DNA from: Prasinococcaceae sp. CCMP 1430
Taxonomy: Eukaryota > Plantae > Prasinodermophyta
Assembly (NCBI GenBank): GCA_013416795.1
Contig: RQSC01000032.1
Span: 452,429-516,428 of the forward strand
Reading direction: 5' to 3'
DNA: 64,000 nucleotides
This document shows positions 14,723 to 36,809 of this stretch, piece after piece (position 1 is the stretch's first letter; each line of letters starts with the position of its first letter). Below the pieces are notes generated by a model. It was given only the letters and a program-made list of their open reading frames with translations. It was not told the DNA's origin and did not search any database. Position numbers and translations under genes: made by a program.

Positions 14723-17700
14723 CTACGCGGAGATGTGGGCAACGGGGTCGCCGTCCCTGTTGCGAAGCGGGTATGGGAGAGAGACTTTGACCCTGTCCAT
14801 GTCTGCTCCCCTCGCCGGCCTTCGTCGTCTCGCATCCATGACCGCCCGATCGTGCAGCGCCTTCTCGGTGGCCCGCTCCCTCTCGAGGACGGACCGCTCG
14901 TTCTTGAGGATGGCCCGCTCCTCTTCGGCAACGGCCCGCGCTTTCTCAGCGACGGACCGCTCGTTCTCAGCGACGGCCCGCTCGTTCGCGGCGACGGCCC
15001 GCTCGTTCTCGGCGATGGACCGCTCGTTCTCGGCGGCGGCCCGCTCCTTCTCGGCGGTGGCCCACTCCTTCTCGGTGGCCCGCTCCTTTTCGGCGACGGC
15101 CTGCTCCTTCTCAGCGAGGGCCTGCTCCTTCTCGGCGGCGGCCCGCTCCTTCTCGGCGGCGGCCCGCTCCTTCTTGGCGGCGGCCCGCTCCTTCTTGGCG
15201 GCCTGCTTCTTAATTATCTTCTCGGCGGCGCGCACAGCCTCGCTCTCGCGCACGGCATTGTTAGCACGCGCGCGTTCATGTTGCAGCTCGGCCTTCAGCT
15301 CATTGAGAAGCTCGTTTTCGTTGTACTCAGCCCACGAGCGCGCGGCCTCCAGCTCTGCCCTAAGCTCCGGCACGAGGTGGCTTTCGTCGCGGGCACGCTG
15401 GGCCTCCAGCTCGGCCCTCAGTTGCTCCACCACGTGGTCTTGGCTTTTGGCCGCGTTGCGCTGGCGCTCGGCTTCCAGCTCAGCCTCCAATGCCTGCAAG
15501 TCATTCTGGAGTTCCTTGACGGTGTCCATGTCCTGCTCGTGGACTTTCCTCGCATTGAGCTCACGCGCCTTAGCCTTGCGTTCGGCCGAGCGCGCCAACG
15601 CCAGAAGCGAATGCAGCGACTGGTCCACGTCCTCGCGCTCCTCATCTGAGGAGTAGGAATCGGAATGAACCTTGTCAGCCAGTGCCGTAGCAGCCGCTAG
15701 CTTCGCCTTGAGCTCGCGGTTGGCGTCAGACGCGCGCGCCCCCATCCGCACAAGCTTCTCCTGCGTCTGCCGAGCCAATTCCTGGCTCCTCTCGGCCTCC
15801 TTCTGTGCCTCGACGACCTGCTCAAAGAGCATGCGCATGCCCTCGCGCGTGCCATCAGACTCGGCGGAAAGATCGCCTCGCCTCGCCTCGGGCTCGTCGT
15901 TCGTGTCGGCCGCGCGTGCGCCTGCCCGCGACAGCCTCGCCTTCATCTCCTCGGCAAGCCTCTGGCTTCGCGCACGCTCAGCCTGCGCCCGCGCCGCCTC
16001 AGCAGCACGCGCGCGCATCGAGTTGCGCGCAGACTCGAGCTCGGAAGTCAACATCGTCTTCGCCTTGTCGGCGTCAGCGCGGATCGCGTCGCCGCGCTCT
16101 TTTGCCTGAGCGAGCTTCGTCGAGAGATCGTGGTTTGCCTCAGCCGAACGGAACGCCACGCGCGCGAGCCTCAGCTGCATCTCCTCGGCGATCTCTGCGT
16201 TGGTCTCGGCTTCAGCCTCCGCCTCCTTCGCCTGTACCGTCCACGCGTGCGCGTCGACTCGACAGGACTCGAGCTCGCTGGCCAGCTGCTGTTTCACCTC
16301 CTTTGCCTCGGCGAGGATCTGTGCCTTCTGCTCTTGAGCCTCTCTCAGCTTCTCCCTGAGGACACCGTTGTCGTCGGCCGCACGCGCGCCAACCCGGGAG
16401 AGTCTCGACTGCATCGTCTCAGCCAGGTTCTGGCAACTCTCGACGTCAGCCTGCGCCTGGACCACCTGCCCCGTAAGCTTGCTCATGCCCTGGCGAGCAG
16501 ACGCAAGCTCAGCTGCCATCCTTGACTGGGTGTGAGATGCCTGAGCGCGGGTGATCTCATGCTGCTCCCTTTCCTCGGCAAGCTTTGACGTCAGCTCTCG
16601 GTTGGACTCGGCCGCGCGCGCCGAGACGCTCGCGAGCCGAGATTTCATCTCCTCAGCCAGCCTCGTCGCGGCTTCCGCCTCGGCCTGCGCCTGCGCCGCC
16701 TCCGCCGTGCGCGTGCGCGCTTCATTGCGAGCGGCCTCGAGCTCCGCAGTCACGCTCGATTGGGCCTCCACGGCGTGCGCGAGGTCCGCGTGACCGCGCT
16801 CCCTGGCAGTCTCGAGCTGCGACGTCAGCTGGCGGCTGGACTCGGCCGCACGCCCCGACACGCGCGAAAGGCGAGACTTCATCTCCTCGGCCAGCCCCTT
16901 GGCGGCCTCGGCCTCGGCCTGGGCCTGCGTCGCCTGCGCCGTGCGCATGCGGACTTCGTTGCGCGCGGCCTCCAGCTCGGCGGCCATGCTCGACTTGGCC
17001 TCCGCGGCGTGCGTGAGGTCAACGTTGCCGCGCTCCCTGGCCGTCGCGAGCTCCGACGCGAGCTGGCGGTTGGACTCGGCCACGTGCAAGAGCCGCGACT
17101 TCCACTCCTCGGCCAGCTTCGTCGCGGCCTCCGCCTCCGCCTGCGCCTGCGCCGCCTCCGCCGTGCGCGCGCGCACGTCGTCGCGAGCGGCCTCGAGCTC
17201 CGCGGCCATGCTCGACTGGGCCTCGACGGCATTTGTGAGGTCCACGTGGCCGTTCTCCCTGGCCGTCGCGAGCTGCGATGTCAGCTGGCGGTTGGACTCG
17301 GCCGCGCGCGCCGACACGCGCGAAAGCCGGGACTTCATCTCCTCGGCCAGCTGCGTCGCCGCCGCCGCCTCGGCCTGCGCCTGCGCCGCCTCCGCCGTGC
17401 GCGTGCGCACGTCGTTGCGAGCGGCCTCGAGCTCCGCAGCCATGCTCGACTTGGCCTCCTCGGCCTCCGCACGCGCCTGTGCGCCCTCCTCCCTGGCTGT
17501 CGCCAGCTGCGAAGTCAGCTCTCGGTTGGACTCGGCCGCGCGCGCCGAGACGCTCGCGAGCCGAGATTTCATCTCCTCAGCCAGCCTCGTCGCGGCTTCC
17601 GCCTCGGCCTGCGCCTGCGCCGCCTCCGCCGTGCGCGTGCGCGCTTCATTGCGAGCGGCCTCGAGCTCCGCAGTCACGCTCGATTGGGCCTCCACGGCGT

Positions 17701-20700
17701 GCGCGAGGTCCGCGTGACCGCGCTCCCTGGCAGTCTCGAGCTGCGACGTCAGCTGGCGGCTGGACTCGGCCGCACGCCCCGACACGCGCGAAAGGCGAGA
17801 CTTCATCTCCTCGGCCAGCCCCTTGGCGGCCTCGGCCTCGGCCTGGGCCTGCGTCGCCTGCGCCGTGCGCATGCGGACTTCGTTGCGCGCGGCCTCCAGC
17901 TCGGCGGCCATGCTCGACTTGGCCTCCGCGGCGTGCGTGAGGTCAACGTTGCCGCGCTCCCTGGCCGTCGCGAGCTCCGACGCGAGCTGGCGGTTGGACT
18001 CGGCCACGTGCAAGAGCCGCGACTTCCACTCCTCGGCCAGCTTCGTCGCGGCCTCCGCCTCCGCCTGCGCCTGCGCCGCCTCCGCCGTGCGCGCGCGCAC
18101 GTCGTCGCGAGCGGCCTCGAGCTCCGCGGCCATGCTCGACTGGGCCTCGACGGCATTTGTGAGGTCCACGTGGCCGTTCTCCCTGGCCGTCGCGAGCTGC
18201 GATGTCAGCTGGCGGTTGGACTCGGCCGCGCGCGCCGACACGCGCGAAAGCCGGGACTTCATCTCCTCGGCCAGCTGCGTCGCCGCCGCCGCCTCGGCCT
18301 GCGCCTGCGCCGCCTCCGCCGTGCGCGTGCGCACGTCGTTGCGAGCGGCCTCGAGCTCCGCAGCCATGCTCGACTTGGCCTCCTCGGCCTCCGCACGCGC
18401 CTGTGCGCCCTGCTCCTGCGCCTCCGCCAGCTTCTGCGAAAAGTCGTGGCTCGCAGCCGCCGCGCGTTCCGCCACGCGCGTCAGCCTCGTCCGCATCTCG
18501 TCGGCGCGCTCCGCGTTCGATTCGGCTTCCGCCTGCGCCTGTGCCGCCTGCGCCGTGCGCGTGCGCACGTCGTTGCGAGCGGATTCAAGCTCGGCAGCCA
18601 TGCTCGACTTGGCCTCCTCGGCCTCGGCACGAGCCTGCTCGCCGCGCTCCTTGGCCGTCGCCAGCTGCGACGTGAGCTGGCGGTTGGACTCGGCCGCGCG
18701 CGCCGACACGCGCGCGAGTCTGGCCTTCATCTCATCAGCAAGCCGCGTGGCGTCCTCCGCCTCGGCCTGCGCCTTGGCTGCTTGCGCCGTGCGCGTGTGG
18801 ACTTCGTTGCGTGCGGCCTCGAGCTCGGCAGCCATGCTCGACTTGGCTGCTTCGGCGTGGGCGAGGTCCGTGTGGCCGTGCTCCCTGGCCGTGGCGAGCT
18901 GCGACGTGAGCTGGCGGTTTGATTCGGCAGCGCGAGCCGACACGCGCGCGAGTCTGGCCTTCATCTCATCGGCAAGCTTTGTGGCAGTCTCTGCCTCGGC
19001 CTGCGCCTGCACCGCCTGTGCCGTGCGCGTGCGCACATCGTTGCGGGCGGCCTCGAGCTCCGCAGCCATGCTCGACTGGACCTCCTCAGCGTGCGCAAGA
19101 TCCATGTCGCCGTGTTCCCTCGCCATCGCAAGCTGTGACGTGAGCTGGCGGTTCGATTCCGCCGCACGTGCCGACACGCGCAGGAGCCGAGATTTCATCT
19201 CATCGGCAAGCTTTGTGGCTGCCTCCGCCTCTGCCTGCGCGTGCACGGCCTGGGCCGTGCGCGTGCGAACGTCGTTGCGAGCGGATTCAAGCTCGGCAGC
19301 CATGCTCGACTTCGCCTCCACGGCCTTCGCGAGGTCCGTCACTGGCGCGAGGGACCGTCAGAGCTCGACGCTGCAGTCGACCGCCGACCTGAGCGCCGCA
19401 CGCCCCGACACGCGCGAAAGGCGAGACTTCATCTCCTCGGCCAGCCCCTTGGCGGCCTCGGCCTCGGCCTGGGCCTGCGTCGCCTGCGCCGTGCGCATGC
19501 GGACTTCGTTGCGCGCGGCCTCCAGCTCGGCGGCCATGCTCGACTTGGCCTCCGCGGCGTGCGTGAGGTCAACGTTGCCGCGCTCCCTGGCCGTCGCGAG
19601 CTCCGACGCGAGCTGGCGGTTGGACTCGGCCACGTGCAAGAGCCGCGACTTCCACTCCTCGGCCAGCTTCGTCGCGGCCTCCGCCTCCGCCTGCGCCTGC
19701 GCCGCCTCCGCCGTGCGCGCGCGCACGTCGTCGCGAGCGGCCTCGAGCTCCGCGGCCATGCTCGACTGGGCCTCGACGGCATTTGTGAGGTCCACGTGGC
19801 CGTTCTCCCTGGCCGTCGCGAGCTGCGATGTCAGCTGGCGGTTGGACTCGGCCGCGCGCGCCGACACGCGCGAAAGCCGGGACTTCATCTCCTCGGCCAG
19901 CTGCGTCGCCGCCGCCGCCTCGGCCTGCGCCTGCGCCGCCTCCGCCGTGCGCGTGCGCAGCAGCAACGCTCGCCGGAGCTCGAGGCGTCGGTACGAGCTG
20001 AACCGGAGGAGCCGCTCCGCACGCGCCTGTGCGCCCTCCTCCCTGGCTGTCGCCAGCTGCGAAGTCAGCTCTCGGTTGGACTCGGCCGCGCGCGCCGAGA
20101 CGCTCGCGAGCCGAGATTTCATCTCCTCAGCCAGCCTCGTCGCGGCTTCCGCCTCCGCCTCGGCCTGCGCCTGCGCCGCCTCCGCCGTGCGCGTGCGCAC
20201 GTCGTTGCGAGCGGCCTCGAGCTCCGCAGCCATGCTCGACTTGGCCTCCTCGGCACTTGTGAGGACCCTGTCGCCGTTCTCCCTGGCCGTCGCGAGCTGC
20301 GACGTCAGCTGGCGGTTGGACTCGGCCGCGCGCGCCGATACGCGCGCGAGCCGCGATTTCATGTCAGCAGCAAGCTCGGCGTTGCCGGCAGCCTCGGCCT
20401 GTGCCTGGACCGCCTGTGCCGTGCGCGAGCGCAAGTCGTTGCGCACGGACTCGAGCTCGGCAGCCATGCTCGACTGTGCCTCCTCGGCCTCAGTGCGCAT
20501 CTTTTCGCGCTCCTCCGTCGCTGCAGCAAGCTTCGATGTGAGGTTGCGGCTTGTCTCTGCCGCCCGCGCTGACACCCGCGTGAGCCTCGCCTTCATCTCC
20601 TCAGCCAGCGCCGCGTTGCTAGTCGCCTCGGCTTGCGCCTGCACCGCGAGCGACGAGTGCAAGCGCGCGTCGTTGCGCGCAGACTCGAGCTCGGCGCTCA

Positions 20701-22540
20701 TTCTCAGCTTCGACTCCTCCGCTTCCACGCGAATTCTGTCGCCCTCTGCCTTGGCCTCGGCGAGCTTCGACTCGAGGTTGCGACTCGTCTCGCTCGCTTG
20801 CGCCGCCACGCGCGTGAGCCTCGATTGCATCTCGTCCACAACCTGCTGGCTGTATTCGGCCTGCGCTTGCGCCTTCACAACCTCGCCCGAGAGCCGTTCC
20901 ATGCCTTGGCGCGCAGACTCGAGTTCGGCGGCCATGGCCGTCGAGCCGTGAGCAAGCCGGTCGCCGTGCGCACTTGCCTCCGCCAGCTCCGACTTGAGAC
21001 CGCTGATGTTGGTGCGAGCTTCTTCCGCGACCGTGCCCATGCGCGCCTCTGCCTGCTCGAGCCTCGCCCGCAAGTCGTCTGCGACTCTCTGGCTGTTGGA
21101 GGCCTCGTGCTGTGCCTGGGCCGCTTGCCCCGTGAGTTCGTGCATGGCCTGGCGCGCAGACTCGAGCTCGGCGGCCAGCCTCGCCTGTGCCTCTTCCGCC
21201 TCGGCACGGATCTCGTCGCCGCGCTCCCTCGCCTGCGCCAGCTGCGACGTGAGGTCGCCGCGCGCCTCGACCGCGCGCGCTCCCTCCTGCTCGAGTCGGT
21301 GCTCGAGCTGCTCAATGCGTCGCAGGCCGTGGTCGACCTCGGCCTGCGCCCGGGCAGCCTGATCCGTGAGCGTGCGCATGCTCTGGCGCGCAGACTCGCC
21401 CTCGCGGCGCGCCGCATCAAGATCGGTGGCCATCCTCGACTGCGCCTGCTCGGCGTCGGCGCGAATCTCGTCAAGCTCCCGCCGCACGCGGTCCCGCTCC
21501 GACTCCGCCGCCGCCGCTCGCCCCTCGGCCTGAGCGAGCGCGTCCTGCACGGCGTCGCGCTCGCGCTCCGCTGCGGCCGCTCGCTCTTTGGCGTGAGCCA
21601 GCGCATCCTGCACGACGTCGCGCTCGCGCTCCGTCGCCGCCGCTTGCCGCTCAGCCGCGGCGAGCGAGGCCTGCACTGAGTCCCGCTCGCCTTCCATCGC
21701 CGCCGCGTGCCGCTCAGCCTCCGCGAGCGATGCCTGCAGGCCGCCCACCGTCTCCTGGAGTTCTCGCCGCTCGACCTCCGCGCGCTGCAGGCGCGCCTGC
21801 TCCCCCTCGAGCTCGGCCTGCAAGGCGCCGTTTCGGAGGGCCTCGCGTTCGCTGACTTCGGTCGCACGTGCCCCTGCCTCCTCGAGCCTCGACCGCAGCT
21901 CCTCGACGACCTTGCGGCTGTTGTCAGCATCGGTCTGCGCCTTGAGAGCCTGCGCGTGCGCGGCGCTCGCCTCGGCCGCCCGCGCGCTCGCGTGCTCGAG
22001 CCTGATCTGCAGCTCCTGGACCACCCTCTGGCTGTTCTCCGCCTCCGCCTCCGCCTGCGTCGCCTTCGCCTGGAGCTTCGTCAAGTCGTTGCGCACAGCC
22101 GCACCCTCGCTGCGCGCGGCGCTCAGCTTGTCGGCCATCCTCGAGTTCGCGTCGCGAGTCTCGTAGAGCTCGCGCTGGATCTTGGAGAACGTCAACACGC
22201 TCAGGTTCGTCCACACCATGTTCACCCAGTAGCGAAACGCTCTCTTTCGGGTGGCGTCGAACCTGGACGCGAAGGGGTACATCACGAGCATCAGCGCGAA
22301 CAGCGGCGCGGACATCAAGAGCGTCCACACGTAGAAACAGATGCCGCGCCACAAGTTCACCATCCTGTCCCACGCCGCGCGGACTCCGGCGAACGGCCCG
22401 TCGCCTTGGTCCGTCGCCCCCGCGCGTTCGCCCCGCGGCTCGCCCGCAGCCGCCGGCGCCTCCTCCGTCACCGGCGGCACCTCGTACGGCGCCTGCCGCT
22501 CCTCGTCCGCCGTCCGCCTCGCCTCTCTCATGACCTCCAT
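14723..22540 (-). CDS. giant coiled-coil repeat protein A (~2,600 aa once repaired): LPAAT1-like membrane hairpin, ~23 x 78-aa repeats, AEKERAA heptad tail
   Basis: ORFs 19358-22921 and 14723-19342 are in the same frame. The only stop lies inside a complemented 55-nt block (19340-19394). ATG 22540 is the first visible start; the true start may lie in or beyond the N gap at 22619-22652. Confidence 0.8.
14865..15205 (-). repeat. 21-nt tandem repeat encoding AEKERAA-type heptads
   Basis: Repeated ggcggcccgctccttctc units; protein AAKKERAAAEKERAAAEKEQALAEKEQAV... Confidence 0.9.
16585..18410 (-). repeat. near-identical 924-bp tandem duplication (four repeat units); a third partial copy at 19395-19959
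   Basis: Identical shadow ORFs at 16879/17803 (offset 924) and 19429 (offset 1626 from 17803). 924 nt = 308 aa = 4 x 78 minus a 4-aa deletion. Block ends are approximate. Confidence 0.85.
19340..19394. other. 55-nt block complemented but not reversed (assembly artefact)
   Basis: The minus strand reads g ctc agg tcg gcg gtc gac tgc agc gtc gag ctc tga cgg tcc ctc gcg cca gtg. This is the base-by-base complement of the regular repeat c gag tcc agc cgc cag ctg acg tcg cag ctc gag act gcc agg gag cgc ggt cac. Confidence 0.95.
19960..20014. other. second 55-nt block complemented but not reversed (assembly artefact)
   Basis: The minus strand reads cggctcctccggttcagctcgtaccgacgcctcgagctccggcgagcgttgctgc. 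This is the complement of the regular gccgaggaggccaagtcgagcatggctgcggagctcgaggccgctcgcaacgacg. Confidence 0.95.
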
Positions 22541-22618
22541 CGGGGTTGCCAGCGCGGCCGCGCCCACCCCCCGCTGCGGCGACACGCCGCGTGAGCTCGG
22601 GCCGCGGGCGGGCAGGCT

Positions 22619-22652
22619 NNNNNNNNNNNNNNNNNNNNNNNNNNNNNNNNNN
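22619..22652. other. assembly gap (34 N)
   Basis: N run. Confidence 0.99.
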
Positions 22653-24522
22653 CCCCCACCCCCACCCCCACCCCCACCCGCTGCCGCCGCCGGCGCCCCG
22701 CTCGCTCGGCGTCGTCGGGCGAGACGAGATGTGTGGCGTCGGGCGCCCGGCCGCGCCGTCCGCGCCGCAGCAGGGTGCACCCGCGCGCGCGCCCGACGGC
22801 GCACGTTCGGGGTCTGACCCCAAAAAGCAAAAATTTCAAACCCAAACCCCGAAACCCTCGACCCCCAACCTCCGTGCTCCGGTTTGGCGCTCTCGCGCGT
22901 GCATTCCAACACCCCTCTCAAACCCTTTTCTCGGGAACGACCCCAAACGCGCGCGCGCGCGCGCGCGCGCGCGCGCGCCGCAGCGGAGCAGGTTCCGCGC
23001 GGATCCGCGCGAATTCCCCGCGGCGGCGGGAACCCGGCGAAAAAAACGCGAACGCGCGGAAGACGCGGAAAACGCGGAAACGCGGGAGCGAAACGCCCTC
23101 CCCCGAACGCGGCCCGTCAAAAGCCCATCGAAATCAAAGGCCGCGACGGAACGAAGCGCGCTGCGATGGCAATTCGGCCCGCCGAACGTCGGAACGAATC
23201 GGTATTGCGATGCGATTGCAATTCGATGCGATGCGATGCGATGTATGTAGTCTCCTGTGGCTACTTATAATGTAATGATGAATGGTAATATGGGAGGGAT
23301 CGAAGTGCGCGCGCGTCCTTCCTCACCTGCCTTCATTCCTTCCTTCCTTCCTTTTTCCTGCTTTTTTTTTTTTTTGGTCTCCCGACCGAACTCTGTTCCG
23401 TTCCCCCCTTTGGATTTTTCGATGTTGGGCGGACGTTTCTTGCCTCCTTTCATCAGAAAGACAGTTATAGACGAGGGTCGTTTTTGATTTGGGTGGGAAA
23501 TTGCTCCGCACACACACACATCACACACACTTGAGACTTTCGCTGGGGGCGGATTTTTTGGCTGCAACCCCAGGCAGGTCGTGTTGATTTTGATGGCGCC
23601 CTCACCTCCCCCCACCTCCCCCACCACCTCGCCTCGCCTTCGGCCTCGTGCGCCCCATCCTCCCACCCCCTCCTCCCGAACGGCCAGAGCGTCTGCTGCG
23701 CGCCCCCCTCCTCGCTCTGCGCCGCGCAGCGCGCGCTGCGCCCGCCGTTTTTTCCCGCCGCCGCCGCGCGAAAAAGCGCCCCGCGGACGTTGCGGGCGGG
23801 CCGCCGCCGTGCGGGCAGGCTGCGGCAGCGCACAGAGCGCGCGCCGGCCGCGCTTCGTTGCAGCCGCGACGATACCAATTCTCTTCGCGATGTGCACATG
23901 TGCGTGGGCAGGGACGGTACAGTACAGTGTGCATGGACGCTTCACGAGGCTTGTGAGACGCTTCTCGGCCACCACACCCGTTTTTCCTACGGAAACGATT
24001 CCGAGAAGCTCGACGCGGAGCGCGAGAATGCGAATGTATGAGCATTCGACCGGAATGCGTGCTAATTCGCGCGCGCGCGTTCGCGGGGGAACGCGCGCGC
24101 ACGCGCGCCTCATCCGGCTCCAAAAACCAACGATCCGATCCGCTGGTGTAACTGCCGCAGCCGAGGCGCGTCGCGACGGCGCGAGGGCGGGAGGGCGCGC
24201 GGGTGAGAGCGAGGGCCGAGGGGCGGCGTGAGGGCGCCGGGAGTGAGGGCTGTTACGTCTCCCCACCCACCCCACCCCTCCTGCCGTCGCCCTTGATGTG
24301 GTCGCTCCGCGCGCGCGGCGTCACACCGCGCGGTGCGTGCCTCGCAGGCGCCGTGACATCGTGCGGCGCCAACGGGCACCGCGGCGAGGGTGCCGCTGAG
24401 GCTCTCCCCCGCCACTGTCTGGCCGCAGGTTCCTGCGCGCGGTCCTTGCGGAGCGAGAGGCGGTCGAGTTCGAGAACTGTGGACGTTGCACGGAGGACCG
24501 CGAGATAAGGGAGGGGAGGCAG

Positions 24523-25320: not shown

Positions 25321-26053
25321 ACTCTAGAATCAGTACGGGCGGGCGGGCGGGCACGGCGCGTTCCTCCCCAGGCACGGAGCACAGGGCCAGCAGGGCCGCA
25401 TGGCTCGACCGACTTCAAGCGGCAGCTCGATTCTCGAGCTCGTGCTCGAGCTCGGGCCCTCGAGCACTCCGTCCGAGTTCCAAACCCTGCAGCACACACC
25501 TCCCTGAAATAATACCACGACGTTCCCAAACGATCGACGCTTGCTTGGCTGGCCTCGGTTGGCCTTCGTCCGGCGCGCGAGTCCCCCATCGGCAGTCACG
25601 CACGCGCGGCTGGTGCGGTGCGCGCTGGCGGCGGGCCCAGCCTGTGCACACCCAGCCGCGGACGGCGCACCCTCCCTCCTCTCTCTCGCCACCCATCTCT
25701 GCATCCAGCACTGTCCTGTACGTCGCTAGCTTCGGGCCGTTCCTTAATAGCTTCCTTCAGTACTACAGTAGGGTTTCACGAGGGTGCGCCGCGCGCGCGC
25801 AAAAAAAAAAAAATCCCACGTGTCACGAATGGTCTGCGGGACACGGCGCGATACGATACGATGGCGACGAAGAAGTCTGACCTGGTATCAGCAAAAAATT
25901 ATACGCGTCGCACGCACGCGCGCGCGCTCGCGCTCGCTCGCTCGCGCGGGACGCCGTGTACCAGGTGCGCGGCGCGGCCCTGCCCTGCGCGCCTACGCGG
26001 CGCCCCGGCGGCACCGCTGTCCGTCGCGGCGCGCCAGCTAAGGGGGGTGGTTA

Positions 26054-26479
26054 CTAGTACGGGTCGCGGACCGCCGACAGCCGCGCGAGCCTGTCCTGCA
26101 TCTCGTCCAAAAGCTGCTGGCTCCTCTCGTACTGGGCCTGCGCCCTGACCGCCGCCGCCTTGTGCCGCCACGCCTCGTCGCGCGCGGCCTGGAGCTGGGC
26201 GGCCAAGGTGAGCTCCGTCTCCTCCTTCTCGAGCTCGCGCTGCATGTGGTAGAACGTCAACGTGCTCATGTTCGCCCACACCAGGTTGGCCCAGATGTGG
26301 AACGCCTTCTTGCGCACCGCGTCGAACCTCGAAACGAAGGGGAACATCGCGGCCATGAGCGCGAACAGCGGGACGGACAGGACAATCGTCCACACGTAGA
26401 AGCAGACGCAGCGCCACACTGCCACCGCGCCGGAGAATGCCTTGTCAAAGATGTCCCTGTTGTCGTCGGGCATCGCCAT
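26054..26479 (-). CDS. short paralogue B: LPAAT1-like membrane hairpin plus one coiled-coil repeat unit (~141 aa)
   Basis: WRCVCFYVWTIVLSVPLFALMAAMFPFVSRFDAVRKKAFHIWANLVWANMSTLTFY, then QRELE..LAAQLQAARDEA..AVRAQAQYERSQQLLDEMQDRLARLSA. ATGs at 26479 and 26473; the frame is open to TTG 26644. Confidence 0.75.
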   Translation of the reverse strand: MAMPDDNRDIFDKAFSGAVAVWRCVCFYVWTIVLSVPLFALMAAMFPFVSRFDAVRKKAFHIWANLVWANMSTLTFYHMQRELEKEETELTLAAQLQAARDEAWRHKAAAVRAQAQYERSQQLLDEMQDRLARLSAVRDPY

Positions 26480-27399
26480 CGCCGCCCCCTCCGCGGCCGC
26501 GACCGCCACGTTCGCCGCGCGCCGCTGTACCGGGCCGCGGCCGACGCCGCGCGCTGCGGCCGGCACGGGCGGGAGGCGAGCGGCGCTCACGGCCGCCGGT
26601 GCGGCGGTCGCGGCGGCGGGGGTGGATGCGAGAGAGGCTCGCAAGTCGCCCTGCGCAACCCCTGCCGGGGCTCTTGAGGTTCAAGGCGCTGCGGGGCCTG
26701 CAGCGTGCGCTGCGCTGTTTCCGCCGAGCGGCCGCGCGCTCGTCGGGCGGGGCATGGAGCGCTTCGTGCGCGGCGACCTGGGCAGCGCGATGGCAGACTT
26801 CGACGCCGCGTACGAGATGGACGAGCAACTCAGGCCGCTTTTGTGGCAGCGCGGGCTGTCGCTTTACTACGCAGACAGGTTCGACGAGGCGCAGGTGCGT
26901 GATGCCCGCACACGCACGTTGCTCAACGCCATCGCACGCTCTCCGCCGGCTGCTCACACTGCGCGCTCACTCGCGCCATGCGCAGGCGCAGTTCCTGCTC
27001 GATACCTCGCGCAATCCGAACGACCTAGAAGAGCTCCTGTGGGCATTCGTATCGGACGCGCGCCGTCCTGGCAGCTCGGCGGCGGCAGCCCGTGGCCGAC
27101 TTCCCACGTTTCGCGGACGCGAGCGCCGCGCGCCGCTGCGTGCCGCGTGGGAGGCTGCGCGCACCGGCGCGCCGGAAGCGCTCGAGCAAGCGCTGGCAGG
27201 CGCGGAGGATGGCTCTGGCGCGCAGTTCTACTGCTTGCTATACACTGGCCTGCTTGCCGAGGCCGACGGCGACGCGGTGCGCGCGCGCGAGTATATCTCT
27301 CGTGCGGCGCGCTCGCCGTACGCAGCGCGCAGCGGGGACTACATGGGCGCACTCGCAATCAACCACGCGCAGCTACGCGGCTTCGATGCGGGCGCGTAG
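26451..27399 (+). CDS. conserved plastid-type TPR protein (NlpI-like)
   Basis: RGMERFVRGDLGSAMADFDAA..RPLLWQRGLSLYYADRFDEAQ|AQFLLD..NPNDLEE..GDYMGALA. Intron 26895-26985. The N-terminus is Ala/Arg-rich with RRAAL. Start ATG uncertain. Confidence 0.8.
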
Positions 27400-27481
27400 A
27401 CTACGAGTGCCGCCGCAGCAGTACACTGTACCGTATTGTGTCTCTACAAGCTCTTCCCTCCGAGACCGCGTGCATGCTGCG

Positions 27482-28189: not shown

Positions 28190-29252
28190 CTGCGTGGGGG
28201 CGCGGGCGCTGCCGTCAGCACTGCTCCACCCGCCCTCTCCTTGTTGCAAGCGCTGGCACCCGCTCGCGATCTTTTTTTTTTTTAGGCGAAATCCCGCCCC
28301 GGCGAAGCTTCAACCGTCAAGGAGCGCCGCGCGCGCGCGCGCGGGCACTGCTCCTCCCTCTCCTCCCGCCCCGCCCCAAGGGATGAAGGCAAGACATCAG
28401 GGCCTCTCCTCTCGCCTCTGTCTCCCTGGCGTGGCGTTTCTGCCTCCCCCCCGCCCCCCGCCGCCGCGCCCCCTCGCGCGCACTGTGGCGGCGCGCGCGA
28501 CACCGCAGCCCGCAAAGACGACCGCCGCGCACCAACGATCCCCAATCGAAATAACATTATGTTGAATCAATACAACTCATTTAGACTTCACAAACGACGT
28601 TACATTCGTATGAAATCTAAAATATTCCGAAAGCCGCAAGCTCCTCACGGGCGAGCAGACTTGGATAAGTCTCAAGCACGTCGCGTGTCGGATTCGGCGT
28701 CGCCGCATGCGTTTTGACCTGCCGCGGCCCAACGTCACACTTTTTGGAATGACTTCCATTTGAATACAACCTCCGTGTTTTTATCGCCCTTATTAGACAT
28801 CTCCGTGAGTTCGTCAGAATACGACGGATTCAATTTGGAGGGCGGCACGGCGGCGGGGGAGCGCGCGGCCCGCGACGGAGCCGCGCCGCGCGGGGGATTC
28901 GCATGCATTGACTTCTTCGATGTTTTTTTTGAACGGGCCCACGTCACAAAGCACGTCGAGACGGGCATATTTTAACCCTCCTTCTACCCCAAATATGCAC
29001 AGCGTGCCGCGTTCGTACCCATACCTTGAAGCGTTCTTGTTCGGGACAGCAGTTGAGGCGGAGGCCCCCCGGGAGAGACGCGTCAGCCCGCGGTGGCGTC
29101 GGCGCGCCGAGGCTGCAAGCGAGCAGGTGGAACCAAGGCGACGGGCGGCGCAGGCGCCCGCTGCCAGCGGCGCCGGCGTCGCCGCCGCGGCCGCCCAATC
29201 GCTGTCACATATACTGTTTGATTGTTACATACAAGTGTGCACGTACGTGCTC

Positions 29253-32200
29253 CTACGCCGAGACGCCGAGCACGCCGCTGCCGCCCCGAGCAACGTCGGC
29301 GTCGACGAGCGATTCCTCGGCGGCGCGCTCTGCCAGCGCCGCCGCCTTCTCGGCGCGCGCGCCAACGGATTCCAGCTCGTCGCTGAGTTCCTGCACGAGG
29401 TCCTTGTCCGAGAGCCACCGCTGGATGAAATTCGAGCAGAACTTGAACGCGTCCTTCTCGCGCGACCGCTTCACGTGCGCCTCGCGCGCCACGGCCTGTC
29501 GTTCGGCCGCATGCGCCTCCGCAAGCTGCGACTGCAGCGAGGCCGCCACCTCCTCCACGTCGTCGTACTCGTCCTGCAGCGCGTCGTGAGCATGCATCAA
29601 GTCGGCGTGCGCCTGCATGGCAGCGCTCACCGCCGCCGGCGTGACACCCCCGCCCTCGCGAAGGACATCCGTCCGGTCGCACAGGGCGCCAAATGCGCGC
29701 TCCAGGTCTCCGAGGCGCGCGCGCAGCCTGTAGGCCTCCGACTCGCTCGCCGCGAGCTGGCCCCTCGCGTCCGACAGCTGCGAGGACAGGGCGTGGCTCT
29801 GTTCGGCCGCGTGCGCTCGCACCCGCGCCAGCTTTGACTCGAGCAAATCGGCGTGATTCTGGTTCTGCTGGACCGCGGCCTCCGTCCGCGCCAGCTGGGC
29901 CGTGCGCGCGCGCACGTCGTCGTGCGCCGACTCAAGCTCGGAGGCCATTCTCGACTGTGCCGCCGCGGCGTCGGCGCGGATCTTGTCACCCTGCTGCCTC
30001 GCCTCCGCCAACTTGAGCGTGAGGTCACGGTTCGCCTCGATCGACCGCGCGAGTCTCACCTCCAGGTCCTCGACACGTTGCTGATAGTCCTTGGCCTCAG
30101 CCTGCGCCTGCTCCGCCTGTGCTACGCGCGTGCGCTGGAACATGCGTGCAAACTCAAGTTCGGCGGCCATGTGCGCCTGCACCTCCTCGGCTTCCGCGCG
30201 GATCATGTCACCCTGCGCGTGTGCGTCTGCCAGCTGGGAGGCGAAGTCGTGGCTGGCCTCGGCCGCGCGCTCCGACACGCGAGCGAGCCTCTCCTGCATC
30301 TCCTCCGCATGCCTGCTGCTCTTGTCGGCCTCGTCCTGCGCGCGCGCCGCCTGCGCCGTGCGCATGCGCACGTCCTCGCGGGCAGACTTGAGCTCGGCCT
30401 CCAGTCGCGCCTGCGTCTCCTCGGCTTGAGCGCGAATCCTGTCGCCCTGCTCGCTCGCTTCCGAGAGCTTCGCCCCGAGCTCGTGGCTCGCCTCAGCCGC
30501 GCGCGCGGCCACGCGCGCGAGCCTCGCTTTCATCTCTTCCGCGAGCTCAGCGTTGGCGTCGGCCTCGGCCTGCGCCTGCGCTGCCTTTGCAGTGCTCGTA
30601 TGCGCGTCGTTGCGCGCAGACTCGAGCTCGGCCGCCATTCGCGACTGTGCCTCCTCCGAGTAAGCGCGAATGGCGTCACGCTCCCCTCTTGCCTCCGCGA
30701 GCTTCAGGCCGAAGTCACGGCTCGACTCGGTGGCACGCGCCGCCACGCGCGCGAGTCTCGTCTGCATTTCCTCAGCGAGTTGCGAGTTGGCCTCTGCCTC
30801 CGCCTTTGCCTGCGCCAGCTCCGACGTGCGCGCGCGCACGTCGTTGCGCGCGGATTCCAGCTCCGCGGTCATGCGGGCGTGGGTCTCCTCGGCCCAAGCG
30901 CGCATCCTGTCACTGTGCTCCTGCGCGTCCGCCACCTGGGATGCGAAGTCGTGGCTGGCCTCGGCCGCACGCGCCGCCACGCGGGCGAGCCTTCCCTTCA
31001 TCTCCTCAGCGAGCTGAGCGTTGGCGTCGGCCTGCGCCTGCGCCTGCGCGGCCTGGGCTGTGCGGGCGAGAGCGTCGTTGCGCGCGATCTCGAGCTTGGC
31101 AGCCATGTCCAACTGCGCTTGCTCAGCGCCGGCGCGAAGCATGACGCCGTCCTCCCTCGCCTCCGCGAGCTGCGACGTGAGGTCGCGGCTTGTCTCGGCC
31201 CCGCGCGCTGCAACGCGCGACAGCCTCGCCTTCATCTCCTCAGCAAGTTCGGCGCTCGAGTCGGCGTCAGCTTGCGCTTGCGCTGCCTGTGCCGTGCGCG
31301 CGCTCACGTCGTTGCGTGCTGACTCGAGCTCGGCGGCCATGCTCGAATGCGCGCGCTCCGCGTCGGCGCGAATCTTGTCGTTCTCCTCCTTTGCGGCGGC
31401 CAGCTTCGAGGCCAGATCACGGTTGGCGTCCGCTGCACGCGCTGCCATTCGCGCGAGCCTGACCTGCATCTCCTCAGCAAGCTGGTGACTCTTGTCAGCC
31501 TCGGCCTGCGCCCGCGCCGCCTGCGCCGTGCGCGCGTGCGCGTCCTGGCGGGCTGACTCGAGCTCGGCTTCCATTCGCAAGTGTGCCTCCTTTGCCTCAG
31601 CCCGAATCCTGTCGCCCTCGACCGTGGTATCAGCGAGCGTCGATATCATGTCGCTCCTCGTCTCGGCCGCGCGATACGACAACCGCGCAAGCTCCAGCTG
31701 CGATTCCGCATCGGGGTCATTCCGAGACACAACTTCGATGGCCAACCTCGACTGCACCTCCTCAGCGTTGGAGCGAGCCTTGTCGCTCCGCGCCTCTGCC
31801 TCTGCCAATTTCGAGGACAGCTCGCGGTTTGCCTCGGCCGCACGTGCTGCCACCCGCGTGAGCCTCGACTGCATCTCCTCGGCGAGCTTGCTGCTCTTGT
31901 CGGCCTCGGCCTGCGCGTGTGCAGCCTGGGCTGTGCGCGCGAGCACATCGTTGCGCGCAGACTCGAGCTCTGTAGTCATCCTCGACTGCGCTTCCGCGGC
32001 CTCGGCTCGAATGGCATCGCCCTGCTCCTTCGCAGCAGCAAGCTTCGCCGTGAAACCACGGTTGGCCTCGGCCGCGCGCTCAGCCACGCGCGCGAGCCTC
32101 GACTGCATCTCCTCCGCAAGTCGGTTGCTCTCGTCCGCCTCCGCCTGCGCCTGCGATGCCTCTGCCGAGCGCACGCGCAAGGCATTTCGCGCGGACTCAA

Positions 32201-35200
32201 GCTCTGCGGACATTCGCGACTGCCTTTCCTCCGCCTCGGCGCGTATCCTTTCACCTCGCTCCTCCGCTGCTGCGAGCTTCGAGGTGAGGTCACTGTTCGT
32301 CTCGGCCGCACGTCCGGCCACCCTCGCAAGCCTTGACTTCATCTCCTCAGCGAGCTCCGCGTTGGCACTGGCCTCGGCCTGCGCCTGCGCCGCCTGGGCC
32401 GTGCGCATGAGCACATCGTTGCGTGCAGACTCGAGCTCAGCGGCCATTCGCGACTGCTCTTCTTCCGCCTCGGCACGTATCCTTTCACCTCGCTCCTCCG
32501 CCGCGGCGAGCTTCGACGTGAGGGCACTGCTCGTCTCGGCCGCGCGCTCTGCCACGCGCGCGAGCCTTGTCTGCATCTCCTCAGCAAGCTCTGCGTTGGC
32601 GTCGGCCTCACCCTTCGCATTTGCCATCTGTGAAGTCCGCGAGCGCACGTCGTTGCGTGCAGACTCGAGCTCAGCGGCCATTCTCGACTGCTCTTCGGCG
32701 GCCTCGGCACGGATCTTGTCGACCTCTTTCTGCGCCGTGGCGAGCTTCGACGTGAGGACACGGCTCGTCTCGGCTGCACGATGGGACACTCGCGTCAGCC
32801 TCGAAATCATAGCTTGAGCGAGCTCCGCGTTGGTGTCGGCGTCGGCCTGTGCCTGTACCGCCTGTACTGTGCGTGCGCGCGCGTCTTGGTGCGAGGACTG
32901 AAGTTCGGCGGCCATTCTCGACTGCGTCTCCTCGGCCTCGGCGCGAATCTTGTCACCTTGCTTCTGCGCGTCTGAAAGCGCAGCCGTCAGATTGCGACTG
33001 GTGTGAGCCGCACGATCGGAAACCCTCGAGAGCCTCGACTGCATCTCTTCAGCAAGTGTCGCGTTCGAGGCGGCCTCAGCCTTCGCCTGCACCGCTTCTG
33101 CCGTGCGCGCGCGCACATCGTTGCGCGCCGACTCCAGTTCGGCGGTCAAATGCGCCTGCGCCACCTCTGCATCCGCGCGAATCCGATCGCCCTCCTGCCT
33201 GGCGTCCGCCAGCTTGGAGGTGAGGTCACTGCTTGTCGCAGCCGCACGTGCACCCACGCGCGACAGCCTCCCTTTCATCTCCTCGGCAAGCTCCAGCATG
33301 GAGTCGGCCTCGCGCTGCGCCTGAAGTGCCTCCGCAGTGCGCGAACGCACGTCGTTGCGCGCAGACTCGAGCTCCGCAGCCATGCTCGACTGCGCGTTTT
33401 CGGAGTCGGCACGGATCTTGTCACGCTCCTCCTTTGCATCTGCTAGCTTGACGTTTGCCTCGGCAGCACGTGTTGCCATCCGCCCGAGCCTTGTCCGCAT
33501 CTCCTCGGCGAGTTTCTGACTCCTGTCGGCCTCAGCCTGCGCACGCACTGCCTGCGCCGTGCGCTTACGCATCTCGTTGCGCGCAGACTCGAGCTCGGCT
33601 TCCATGCGCGATTGCGCCTGCTCCGCCTCGGCGCGAATCTGGTCGCCCTCAGTCCTCGCGTCCGAGAGTGCCACCATGAGGTCGTGGTTGGCCTCGGCAG
33701 CACGTGCTGCCACCCGCGTGAGCCTCGACTGCATCTCGTCCGCCAGCTTGTGGCTCTTGTCAGCCTCGGCCTGCGCCTGCGCTGCCTGTGCCGTCCGCGC
33801 GCGCACGTTTCTGCGTGCGGTCTCCAGCTCGGCCGTCAAACGCGCCTGCGCCACCTCTGCATTCGTGCGAATCCGATCGCCCTCCTGCCTGGCGTCCGCC
33901 AGCTTGGAGGTGAGGTCACTGCTTGTCGCAGCCGCACGTGCCCCCATGCGCGACAGCCTCGACTGCATCTCCTCGACAAGCGCCGAGTTGGAGTCGGCTT
34001 CGGCCTGCGCATGTGCTGCCTGTACTGCACGCGCGCGCACGTCATTGCGAGCCGACTCGAGCTCAGTGGACATTCTCGACCGCACTTCCTCCGCCTCTGC
34101 CCGAATCCTGTCGCCCTCTTCCCTTGCGTCCGCAAGCTTCGACGTGAGGTCGCTCGTCGTCTCGGCTGCACGCGCGCCGAAGCGCGTGAGCCTCGACTGC
34201 ATCTCCTCGGCAAGCTCCAAGTTGGCGATGGCCTCGCGCTCGGCCTGCAAGGCCTGCGCCGCGCGCGCGCGCACGTCCATGCTTGCGGACTCAAGCTCTG
34301 CGGACATTTTTGACTGCACCTCGTCCGCTTCTGCCCGAATCCTGTCCCCCTCCTGCCTTGCGTCCGCAAGCTTCGACGTGAGGTCGCTTGTCGTCTCGGC
34401 TGCACGCGCCCCAACTCGCGTGAGCCTCGACTGCATCTCCTCGGCAAGCTCTGCATTGGCGCTAGCCTCGGCCTCCGCCTGCACCGCCCGGGTCGTGCGT
34501 GCGCGCACGTCGTTTTGTGCGGACTCGAGCTCTGCGGCCAACCTCAACTGTGCGTCCTTTGAGTCAGCACGCATCTTGTCTCGCTCCTCGATTCCTCTTG
34601 CCAGCTGCGTGGTCAAGTCAGTATTTGTCTTGGCCGCACGTGCTGCAACACGCGCGAGCCTCGACCGCATCTCCTTCGCGACTTTGTGACTCTTGTCCGC
34701 CTCAGCCTGTGCTCGCACTGCCTGCGCCGAAGACATGCGCACGTCGTTGCGCGCAGACTCGAGCTCGGCTTCCATGCGTGATTGCGCCTGCTCCGCCTCG
34801 GCGCGAATCTGGTCGCCCTCAGTCCTCGCGTCCGAGAGTGCCACCATGAGGTCGTGGTTGGCCTCGGCAGCACGTGCTGCCACCCGCGTGAGCCTCGACT
34901 GCATCTCCTCGGCGAGCTCGTGGCTCTTATCGGCCTCGGCCTGCGCCTGCTCTGCCTCTGCCGTACGCGCACGCGCGTTGTTGCGCGCGGCCTCCAGCTC
35001 GGCCGTCAAACGCGCCTCCACCTCCTCTGCATCCACACGAATCCTGGCGCCCTCCTCCCTCGCTCTCGCCAGCTGGGAGGTGAGGTCCCTACGTGTCTCC
35101 GCGGCACGCGCCTCCACCCGCGCCAGCTTTGACCTCGTCTCCTCAGCGTTGCGATCGGCCTCGGCTACCGCCTGCGACGCCTGCGCCGTTCGCGTGCGCA

Positions 35201-36715: not shown

Positions 36716-36716
<1 letters not shown>
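29253..36716 (-). CDS. giant coiled-coil repeat protein C (~2,490 aa): Ala/Pro-rich N-part, hydrophobic segment, SEA-like module, ~23 x 78-aa repeats
   Basis: Uninterrupted ORF with the same repeat consensus as protein A (AELESARNDVR.RTAQA.QAQAEA..N..LAEEMQSRL.RV.ARAAE). No ATG is seen before the (CA)n tract. Confidence 0.8.
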
Positions 36717-36775
<59 letters not shown>

Positions 36776-36809
36776 GCACGCACACACACACGTGCTACAC
36801 ACACGTGCT

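What the first reader, a model, noticed from the sequence alone, without database searches (positions are those of the whole stretch)
22178..22355. Plastid LPAAT (LPAT1/ATS2) membrane hairpin reused as an anchor, without the catalytic domain
Seen: WRGICFYVWTLLMSAPLFALMLVMYPFASRFDATRKRAFRYWVNMVWTNLSVLTFSKI runs straight into coiled coil (QRELYE). Recalled, to be verified: plastid 1-acyl-G3P acyltransferases have G.C/FFY.W....PLF..M....P.V..FD..RR.F....N..W...S...FYK[IV] just before the NHQSxxD catalytic domain. No NHxxxxD motif follows here. Inference: a lipid-enzyme targeting/anchor module was captured by exon shuffling.
Basis: partly seen in the sequence, partly recalled or inferred. Interest (0 to 1): 0.8.

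Follow-up and report, generated by a model that had tools for sequence, protein, structure and literature searches.

The report
Lipid-enzyme membrane anchor on giant coiled coils
In a marine green picoalga, two neighbouring expressed genes carry the N-terminal membrane-binding module of the chloroplast lipid enzyme LPAAT, without its catalytic domain, joined directly to coiled coil, so an enzyme's anchor seems to have been reused to fix long filaments to a membrane.

Summary

An 83-aa query around it found 53 proteins at E<=1e-3 among 1.84 billion. One is an environmental orthologue of a 141-aa paralogue in this window. The other 52 are green-lineage plastid-type LPAAT N-termini, matched at the stretch just before the acyltransferase domain.

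A profile built only from LPAAT segments finds just these two loci in the window (64-68 bits). No catalytic part exists anywhere in the 64 kb, by Pfam, motif scan or tblastn.

Contigs from two marine metatranscriptome studies cross the module-coil junction colinearly, while the intergenic DNA is uncovered. Homology ends at Q|R. Four algal LPAAT genes have a phase-0 GT..AG intron at exactly that position, which fits capture of an exon but does not prove it.

The module corresponds to the two-helix membrane motif of bacterial PlsC (PDB 5KYM). The large gene is probably one 2605-aa protein, because its internal stop lies in an assembly artefact.

Anchoring, the target membrane and topology are inferred. 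An intact LPAAT elsewhere in the genome could not be checked. Earlier scan notes on this window (mini-paralogue, artefact blocks, 78-aa repeat family) were re-tested and hold. The scan has no note of this on other DNA.

The parts
22352..22540 (-). Start codon and 63-aa acidic N-terminal extension of the large protein (residues 1-63)
   Evidence: This is the first ATG in the transcript contig, which reaches 17 nt beyond 22618. The extension has 13 D/E against 8 K/R. AF2 gives low to medium confidence and mostly non-helical structure for residues 16-50.
22175..22351 (-). LPAAT-type two-helix membrane module of the large protein (W64-Q122): hydrophobic helix 1, FD..RKR turn, helix 2
   Evidence: Translation. 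Homology to LPAAT N-termini. Maximum Kyte-Doolittle 19-residue mean is 1.99 at residues 67-85. The invariant LPAAT residues F69, F81, M84, P89, D95 and W110 are kept.
14723..22174 (-). Coiled-coil body of the large protein (R123 to the stop at 14723-14725; 2605 aa in total if read through the artefact)
   Evidence: ORFs. Hydrophobic period 3.52-3.54 and 78-aa repeat with 0.52 identity at lag 78. No Pfam family. AF2 predicts a helix for residues 121-219 at pLDDT 94-98.
19340..19394 (.). 55-nt block that is the plain complement (not the reverse complement) of other repeat copies and creates the in-frame stop at 19358-19360; assembly artefact
   Evidence: A 25-mer complement-only scan matches 16790 and 17714.
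19960..20014 (.). Second 55-nt complement-only block inside the coil ORF; assembly artefact
   Evidence: The complement-only scan matches 17410, 18334 and 20200.
26054..26479 (-). Mini-paralogue CDS, 141 aa plus stop: 21-aa N-terminus, two-helix module (W22-Q80 = 26416..26240), then about one coil unit
   Evidence: It is 50% identical to the large protein across the module and junction, E 2e-31. It is identical to environmental P0058. Transcript contigs cover 25922-26554 and 26044-26311. AF2 pLDDT is 88.6.
29253..36791 (-). Third family member (context): giant coil gene with the same 78-aa repeat but a different N-terminus and no LPAAT module
   Evidence: ORF. The module query does not match it while the coil unit does. 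Repeat autocorrelation is 0.53 at lag 78.
22619..22652 (.). 34-nt run of N just upstream of the large gene's 5' end
   Evidence: The transcript contig of run X1 ends 17 nt into it.

Best explanation
Two tandem minus-strand genes encode non-enzymatic proteins. One is 22540..14723, about 2605 aa. The other is 26479..26054, 141 aa. In each, the N-terminal part is a diverged copy of the two-helix membrane-binding module that precedes the acyltransferase domain in green-lineage plastid LPAAT (LPAT1/ATS2, PlsC family). The copy stops exactly at the end of the LPAAT exon that encodes this module and is joined in frame to a heptad-based coiled coil built on a 78-aa repeat.

Shown here: the homology, the absence of any catalytic part, the colinear expressed junction, a single origin of the two copies, and retention of the residues that are invariant in LPAATs.

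Inferred: the module works as an autonomous membrane anchor. It would be a strongly hydrophobic, Pro-kinked helix 1 followed by a basic turn and a helix 2 of near-neutral mean hydropathy, as in PlsC. It would hold the coil on one face of a membrane, as a very long filament in the large protein (about 370 nm if fully helical) and a short one in the mini protein. Neither protein has a transit-peptide-like N-terminus, so the target membrane is more likely reached from the cytosol than by plastid import.

The likely origin is a duplicated 5' part of an LPAAT gene that recombined in the intron after the module exon with a member of a pre-existing coil family. The junction intron was later lost and the fusion gene duplicated.
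For: Homology:
- 53 hits at E<=1e-3 among 1.84e9 proteins. All but the paralogue's orthologue are LPAAT N-termini.
- The full-length hits carry PF01553 directly after the matched stretch, with NHQSxxD about 20 aa further on.
- P0053 contains the peptide encoded by the transit-peptide reverse primer of the experimentally plastidial CrLPAAT1 (PMC5096022).
- A reciprocal LPAAT-only profile hits only the two loci, at 68.3 and 64.5 bits.

No catalytic domain.

Expression and colinearity:
- An X1 contig covers 21750-22618 with 0 mismatches.
- Metatranscriptome contigs from two studies cover 21750-22381 and 21868-22362 across junction 22175/22174 without a gap.
- The intergenic stretch 22746-25733 has zero depth in these three runs.

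Single capture: big and mini form a clade (100/98) nested among LPAATs, sister to P0002.

Constraint:
- All six invariant LPAAT positions are kept in both proteins.
- The three strain differences in the mini CDS are all at third codon positions.

Intron: a phase-0 GT..AG intron lies at the homology end in L005, L007, L008 and L009.

Link to a known anchor: the LPAAT profile aligns the module to residues 9 to about 70 of TmPlsC 5KYM, E 5e-34. These residues form the N-terminal two-helix membrane motif (PMC6688108 citing Robertson 2017).

Hydrophobicity. Coil periodicity. Helical AF2 models.
Against: - No experiment or localisation exists, so anchoring and the target membrane are inference.
- The two AF2 models place the helix break differently: residues 52-54 in the mini protein and 118-120 in the large one. 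The geometry of the module is therefore unresolved.
- Foldseek found no PDB match for the mini-protein model, the only one searched.
- The Micromonas LPAAT gene has no intron, and the donor genome's own LPAAT was not seen.
- The homology break coincides with a structural domain boundary as well as with an intron, so exon capture is not the only route.
- The assembly contains artefacts, and the 5' end of the large gene abuts an N-run.
- Between strains the large protein shows 6 amino-acid changes in 7 nucleotide differences, so its coil is weakly constrained.
Confidence: 0.78

Rival explanations
1. The module is kept not as a passive anchor but to bring the coil to the site of plastid lipid synthesis. 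There it would pair with the two-helix motif of the real LPAAT, or bind lysophosphatidate or phosphatidate in the envelope, as a scaffold or regulator. The mini protein would act as a small competitor or adaptor.
For: The polar and aromatic positions that are invariant in LPAATs (FD..R, W) are retained in both proteins although catalysis is gone. A short and a giant form coexist. The module derives from an envelope enzyme.
Against: Both N-termini are acidic and short, and the upstream ORF of the mini gene is not conserved between strains. Import into the plastid is therefore unsupported. The conserved residues can be explained equally well by membrane insertion. No interaction data exist.
Confidence: 0.1
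2. The fusions are evolutionary debris: an LPAAT 5' fragment that happens to be in frame with a repeat ORF. It is transcribed, but the module has no function.
For: Both genes are restricted to one lineage, with no diverged orthologues found. The coil evolves fast.
Against: Two paralogues about 50% diverged still keep every invariant LPAAT position and the same junction. Strain differences in the mini CDS are all at third codon positions. Both genes are represented in RNA libraries from independent studies.
Confidence: 0.07
3. The module is exon 1 of a genuine LPAAT whose catalytic exons lie outside the window, or are joined by distant or trans splicing. The open frame into the coil would then be a by-product of 68% GC.
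For: High-GC genomes give long spurious ORFs (one search lists many). Algal LPAAT genes do have an intron at exactly this point.
Against: RNA-library contigs run colinearly from the module hundreds of bases into the coil with no joint at 22175. No catalytic sequence occurs within 64 kb on either strand. The coil is a real repeat family with heptad periodicity. The mini gene ends at a stop conserved in environmental contigs.
Confidence: 0.02
4. Chance resemblance between hydrophobic segments.
For: The segment is short (about 60 aa) and hydrophobic. phmmer against PDB gave only weak GPCR and transporter matches with E>=1.
Against: All 52 non-self hits belong to one family at one position. The reciprocal profile gives E about 1e-13 at database scale and no other piece of the window scores.
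Confidence: 0.01

Closest known systems
Plastid lysophosphatidic acid acyltransferase (LPAT1/ATS2 of Arabidopsis, CrLPAAT1 of Chlamydomonas; PlsC family, PF01553)
   Same: The roughly 60-aa segment between transit peptide and catalytic domain is shared. It has a hydrophobic helix with FY...PLF..M....PF, an FD..RR turn and a second helix with an invariant W. Identity is 35-47% and the alignment is gap-free except for one residue.
   Different: There is no acyltransferase domain and none of motifs I-IV. There is no transit-peptide-like N-terminus. The conserved Pro before the domain boundary ('PF') is replaced by Thr in both proteins. The module is followed by coiled coil instead of the alpha/beta domain.
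N-terminal two-helix motif of Thermotoga maritima PlsC (PDB 5KYM; Robertson et al. 2017, as cited in PMC6688108)
   Same: The LPAAT module maps onto PlsC residues 9 to about 70 in a profile alignment. In PlsC this part holds the enzyme on one leaflet, and helix 1 enters and leaves on the same side at a GG kink. Our PLF proline falls in that kink region.
   Different: Here the motif stands without the enzyme it positions. The link is indirect, through the LPAAT profile. Foldseek found no PDB match for our mini-protein model, and the two AF2 models disagree on where the turn is.
Membrane-anchored long coiled-coil tethers and scaffolds (golgins such as giantin, and similar proteins)
   Same: The architecture is alike: one terminal hydrophobic anchor plus hundreds to thousands of residues of heptad coil. 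This comparison rests on general knowledge.
   Different: No sequence relationship to any Pfam coiled-coil family passes threshold. The anchor is N-terminal and derived from an enzyme, not a C-terminal tail anchor. The 78-aa repeat is specific to this gene family.

Membership tests
Plastid-type LPAAT (LPAT1/ATS2, PlsC family) | Acyltransferase domain PF01553 with motif I NHxxxxD | tested here: not met
   No PF01553 hit on the ORF pieces at E<=1. No NHx[ST]xxD in six frames of the window. The catalytic parts of five LPAATs find nothing by tblastn.
Plastid-type LPAAT (LPAT1/ATS2, PlsC family) | Motifs II-IV (the FxxR type, EGTR, and the C-terminal hydrophobic motif) | tested here: not met
   Downstream sequence is coil only. 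tblastn with full-length LPAATs aligns only their residues before the catalytic domain.
Plastid-type LPAAT (LPAT1/ATS2, PlsC family) | Conserved pre-catalytic hydrophobic two-helix module | tested here: met
   E values from 6e-8 to 1e-3 against 1.84e9 proteins. 64.5 and 68.3 bits to a profile built without our sequences. All invariant columns are kept.
Plastid-type LPAAT (LPAT1/ATS2, PlsC family) | N-terminal chloroplast transit peptide | tested here: inconclusive
   The extensions are short and net acidic. The Ala/Arg-rich ORF upstream of the mini gene's ATG is not conserved in a strain that is 99.5% identical downstream, and the transcript contig ends there. No dedicated targeting predictor was available.
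PlsC two-helix membrane motif (5KYM) | Correspondence to helices alpha1-alpha2 of TmPlsC | tested here: inconclusive
   Met indirectly: the LPAAT profile aligns the module to 5KYM residues 9 to about 70. Foldseek found no PDB match for the AF2 model of the mini protein. The turn is placed differently in the two models.
PlsC two-helix membrane motif (5KYM) | Monotopic insertion in one leaflet | not testable with these tools
   This needs protease-protection or carbonate-extraction experiments. Hydropathy alone (KD19 of 2.0-2.2) cannot separate a re-entrant helix from a spanning one.
Membrane-anchored coiled-coil tether (golgin-like architecture) | Long heptad-based coiled coil | tested here: met
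   The hydrophobic period of 3.52-3.54 has power 20-150 times the median. Pro is 0.4% and Gly 1.8% of residues. AF2 helices reach pLDDT 94-98. Oligomeric state was not tested.
Membrane-anchored coiled-coil tether (golgin-like architecture) | Sequence homology to a described tether family | tested here: not met
   Only sub-threshold Pfam matches (APG6_N, HAUS1, Tropomyosin; 11-15 bits against cut-offs of 38-45). The Atlas feature search gave nothing.

The most novel reading that the evidence does not exclude
The PlsC/LPAAT two-helix motif is a self-sufficient, portable membrane-insertion module. This alga has used it to plant a family of filaments up to about 370 nm long on the plastid envelope or another specific organelle membrane. 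That would make a previously undescribed membrane skeleton or tether, with the 141-aa mini protein as its capping or competing partner.
Probability: 0.2. Interest if true: 0.7.

Novelty: new variant of a known kind. Interest (0 to 1): 0.52.

Why it matters
This is a natural experiment on a lipid enzyme. Evolution has cut the plastid LPAAT exactly between its membrane module and its catalytic domain, and has kept the module under constraint in two expressed proteins. If the module anchors on its own, that supports the proposal drawn from the PlsC crystal structure that the two-helix motif is an independent membrane-positioning device. It would also show which conserved residues (FY, PLF, PF, FD..R, W) serve insertion rather than catalysis.

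It also gives a clean, datable example of intron-position-matched domain capture in a compact algal genome. And it points to a family of giant membrane-attached coiled coils of unknown role in picoplankton. The family is lineage-restricted, so the direct biological reach is modest.

Tried and rejected
1. phmmer of the N-terminal 144 aa against PDB sequences gave only chance-level GPCR and transporter matches, E>=1.
2. Foldseek of the AF2 model of the mini protein against PDB found no match. An extended two-helix model is not searchable this way.
3. The ESM Atlas feature search with the mini protein gave no usable hit.
4. The search for homologous proteins with the large protein's N-terminus, at two query lengths with the region restricted to the module, gave nothing. 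No diverged orthologues of the large gene were found. These blanks are limited by the word index and the length window.
5. I first read the Ala/Arg-rich ORF upstream of the mini gene's ATG as a transit peptide. I rejected this for three reasons. The window ORF starts at TTG. The environmental contig L001 is unrelated upstream of 26557 although 99.5% identical downstream. The transcript contig ends at 26554.
6. I first read the L001 divergence point, which follows a CAG, as an intron acceptor. I rejected this because L001 continues into the neighbouring coil gene (window 30631..28448), so it is a genomic structural variant.
7. I guessed the organism was Micromonas because P0049 is its LPAAT. 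I rejected this because the window's pyruvate kinase has no close named relative (Tetraselmis 56-57%, Nephroselmis 53%).
8. Whether this genome has an intact LPAT1 could not be tested. The scan's notes list only a different PlsC fusion elsewhere, and the read-laying run was already used.
Full report
**1. What is at the coordinates.**
It lies on the minus strand, and window:22178-22351 translates exactly to the 58 residues from WRGICFY to TFSKI. The stated end, 22355, is four bases too far, and frame 1 of the stated interval gives other peptides on both strands.

The peptide sits in a minus-strand ORF 19358..22921. The coil continues in a second ORF 14723..19342. The first ATG downstream of a 34-nt N-run (22619-22652) is at 22540, so the peptide is residues 64-121 of the product.

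The window is 64-72% G+C. Its pyruvate kinase (49864-51417) is closest, among named proteins, to Tetraselmis (56-57%) and Nephroselmis (53%). The same DNA occurs in marine metatranscriptomes. The organism is therefore a marine green-lineage picoalga that I cannot name. It is not Micromonas.

**2. Is the resemblance to LPAAT real?**
An 83-aa query (window:22142-22390, minus strand) was scored by HMMER against all 1.84 billion cluster representatives. It gave 53 proteins at E<=1e-3.
- The best hit (P0001, E 3e-22) is an environmental orthologue of a small paralogue in this window.
- All the others are one family, matched at one place: the stretch just upstream of an acyltransferase domain.
- Eight of the nine hits of 300-376 aa that were scanned carry PF01553, starting at or within about 12 residues of the end of the matched stretch. 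The ninth, P0042, looks like a mis-spliced model. NHQSxxD follows about 20 residues after the match.
- Named members come from Closterium, Asterochloris, Acetabularia, Mesostigma and Micromonas pusilla. [quoted passage not shown]
- P0053 contains PNVLLAKI, the peptide encoded by the reverse primer used to clone the transit peptide of CrLPAAT1. That enzyme is the Chlamydomonas orthologue of Arabidopsis ATS2/LPAAT1 and was shown to be plastidial (PMC5096022). P0053 is therefore CrLPAAT1 or a close relative. This last step is an inference.

As a reciprocal test, I built a profile from 21 LPAAT segments only and searched all 853 six-frame pieces of the window. It hit just two loci, at 68.3 and 64.5 bits, E about 5e-14 and 7e-13 scaled to 1.8e9 sequences.

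In the 23-sequence alignment, the six columns invariant in LPAATs are F of FY, F of PLF, M, P of PF, D of FD, and W. Both window proteins keep all six.

**3. No enzyme part.**
- Pfam finds no acyltransferase domain on the ORF pieces.
- No NHx[ST]xxD exists in any frame of the 64 kb.
- Five full-length LPAATs used as tblastn queries align only through their pre-catalytic segment, at 22351-22175 and 26443-26240, and nowhere else.
- The large ORF runs on as coil to a short non-repeat tail and a stop at 14723.

**4. The paralogue and the family.**
A second gene, 26479..26054, encodes 141 aa. It has 21 N-terminal residues, the same module, the same junction (TFYHMQ|RELEK against TFSKIQ|RELYE) and about one coil unit. 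It is 50% identical to the large protein over module and junction, E 2e-31. The identical protein (P0058) and near-identical ones occur in eight environmental entries, all ending at the same stop.

On a tree of the module, the two window proteins form a clade (100/98) nested among LPAATs, next to P0002 (86/72). This indicates one capture followed by duplication.

A third gene, 29253..36791, has the same 78-aa repeat but a different N-terminus and no module. A coil family therefore probably existed independently of the module.

**5. Is the fusion expressed and colinear?**
Contigs of four runs were laid on 21750-26700.
- A 1970-nt contig of run X1 (same organism label) covers 21750-22618 with no mismatch or gap.
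- A 1439-nt contig of metatranscriptome X2 covers 21750-22381.
- A 495-nt contig of X3, from another study, covers 21868-22362. Each of the X2 and X3 contigs has seven substitutions and no gap.
- All three cross the junction (22175/22174) with hundreds of bases on both sides, and no joint is reported there.
- The mini gene is covered at 25922-26554 (X1) and 26044-26311 (X3).
- The intergenic stretch 22746-25733 has zero depth in X1-X3. This serves as the silent-stretch control and argues that these are transcripts, not contaminating DNA.

Contigs cannot give transcript ends with certainty. Even so, X1's contig stops 17 nt beyond 22618, and the mini gene's contig stops at 26554.

**6. N-termini and targeting.**
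The large protein's 63-residue extension has 13 D/E and 8 K/R. The mini protein's 21 residues have 4 and 2.

An Ala/Arg-rich ORF upstream of the mini gene's ATG looked like a transit peptide, but three points count against it.
- In the window it has no ATG, because the ORF starts at TTG.
- Environmental contig L001 is about 99.5% identical to the window from 26557 through the stop and 3' region, yet unrelated upstream. There it joins, after 352 unique bases, to the 3' end of the third coil gene. That strain therefore lacks the window's 26558-28447.
- The transcript contig ends at 26554.

The mini protein therefore most likely starts at 26479. Neither protein shows a plastid presequence. No dedicated predictor was available, so this is inconclusive rather than excluded.

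**7. What the module is in the enzyme.**
A profile of nine full-length plastid-type LPAATs hits one solved structure, Thermotoga maritima PlsC (5KYM), at E 5e-34. The module columns align to PlsC residues 9 to about 70.

According to PMC6688108, citing Robertson et al. [quoted passage not shown] It holds the catalytic domain at the membrane, and helix alpha1 enters and leaves the same leaflet at a G25-G26 kink. The conserved PLF proline of the plant and algal module falls in that region of the alignment.

In the window proteins:
- Helix 1 is strongly hydrophobic, with a maximum Kyte-Doolittle 19-residue mean of 1.99 and 2.19.
- Helix 2 has a mean hydropathy near zero.
- The conserved 'PF' that precedes the boundary in most LPAATs is 'TF' in both proteins.

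AF2 models are confident and helical (pLDDT 88.6 and 85.0), but they disagree on the turn. In the mini protein, helix 2 runs unbroken into the coil and the break is at 52-54. In the large protein the break is at 118-120. Geometry and topology are therefore open.

**8. The coil.**
In the second ORF of the large gene (14726-19342), Ala, Glu and Arg make up about half of the residues. Pro is 0.4% and Gly 1.8%. Across the large gene's coil, large hydrophobic residues recur with a period of 3.52-3.54, at power 20-150 times the median. A 78-aa unit repeats with 52% identity at lag 78. This fits a heptad coiled coil, though the oligomeric state was not tested.

The in-frame stop at 19358 lies inside a 55-nt block (19340-19394). 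This block and a second one (19960-20014) are the plain complement, without reversal, of other repeat copies. No biological process produces that, so I read it as an assembly artefact. I take the gene to be one ORF of 2605 codons, 22540..14723. At about 0.15 nm per residue that is about 370 nm of helix (my arithmetic).

**9. How the fusion may have arisen.**
In the locus of P0002, the LPAAT closest to our module, the exon ends ...FFFYKIE. A 64-nt GTGAGC...GGTAG intron follows, and the next exon starts VEGWENLP...ANHQSYLD. Three further algal loci (L007, L008, L009/L010) have a GT..AG phase-0 intron at the same alignment position: YRVQ|IEGKENL, NKVT|IEGWENV and NKVV|IEGRNNL.

Many of the short hits are gene models that read into this intron (...VQV...TVR, and so on). 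In our proteins, homology ends at the aligned residue (Q122|R123 and Q80|R81), and the profile alignments stop one or two residues later. This is what recombination within that intron, followed by intron loss, would give.

The evidence has limits. The intron sits at the structural domain boundary, so any fusion that keeps a working module would break nearby. The Micromonas gene is intronless. This organism's own LPAAT was not available.

**10. Constraint.**
Between the window and L001, the mini CDS differs at three positions, all third codon positions. Between the window and the metatranscriptome contigs, the large gene differs at seven positions. These give six amino-acid changes, one of them in the module (V86A) and the rest in the coil. 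The numbers are small. They suggest constraint on the mini protein and a fast-evolving coil.

**11. Verdict.**
Shown:
- an LPAAT-derived two-helix module without the enzyme;
- its fusion in frame to coiled coil in two expressed paralogous genes;
- a break in homology at a conserved LPAAT intron position.

Inferred:
- the module anchors the coil to a membrane in the PlsC manner;
- the membrane is reached from the cytosol;
- the origin was exon capture.

Not testable here:
- localisation and topology;
- oligomeric state;
- the presence of the canonical LPAAT elsewhere in the genome.

The proteins are not members of the LPAAT family in the enzymatic sense, because the defining domain was tested and is absent. 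They share only its membrane module. No diverged orthologues were found, so the invention looks lineage-specific. A literature search for LPAAT exon shuffling returned nothing relevant. I rate it a new variant of known kinds (domain co-option; membrane-anchored coiled coil) and of moderate interest.

Earlier scan notes on this same window were each re-tested here. The mini-paralogue note s1-400054 and the complement-only blocks note s1-400055 hold. The 78-aa family note s1-399964 holds for the repeat, but its 'membrane-anchored' label was not tested for the third gene.

Noticed in passing
window 19340-19394 and 19960-20014: Two 55-nt blocks are the plain complement, without reversal, of other copies of the coil repeat (targets 16790/17714 and 17410/18334/20200). 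The first creates the stop that splits the large ORF. This is almost certainly an assembly or scaffolding artefact.
   Followed up: yes
window 26558-28447 versus L001:2180-2531: There is a structural variant between strains. The environmental contig L001 joins the 3' end of the third coil gene (window 30631..28448, 98% identical) to the mini gene (26557..25801) through 352 unrelated bases. The window instead has about 1.9 kb carrying other ORFs.
   Followed up: partly
window 26555-26613: Contigs of run X1 end at 26554 (mini gene, minus strand) and begin at 26614 (running on past 26700). Only about 59 nt lie between what look like two divergent transcripts, so this may be a very compact bidirectional promoter.
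   Followed up: no
window 29253-36791 (minus strand): This is a third giant coil gene with the same 78-aa repeat but no LPAAT module. Its long ORF begins in a (TG)n microsatellite, so the true start is probably further in. The non-repeat N-terminal region includes a short hydrophobic stretch and a small non-coil segment.
   Followed up: no
L005, L007, L008, L009/L010: A phase-0 GT..AG intron separates the two-helix module exon from the exon carrying ENLP...NHxS in LPAAT genes of several unrelated green algae (locus G+C 47-61%). The Micromonas gene (L002 3001-4026) is intronless. Many database 'proteins' of 60-160 aa are models that read into this intron.
   Followed up: partly
window 22653-22690 and 22940-22980: Just upstream of the large gene's 5' end, a (CCCCA)n run directly follows the N-gap, and a long (GC)n run lies about 300 nt further on. 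Read contigs are cut at both places.
   Followed up: no
window 49864-51420 (plus strand): This is an intact single-exon pyruvate kinase (PF00224 and PF02887 in its homologues). Its nearest non-identical relative in 5.8e9 proteins is only 70% identical and unnamed, which shows how poorly sampled this lineage is.
   Followed up: partly
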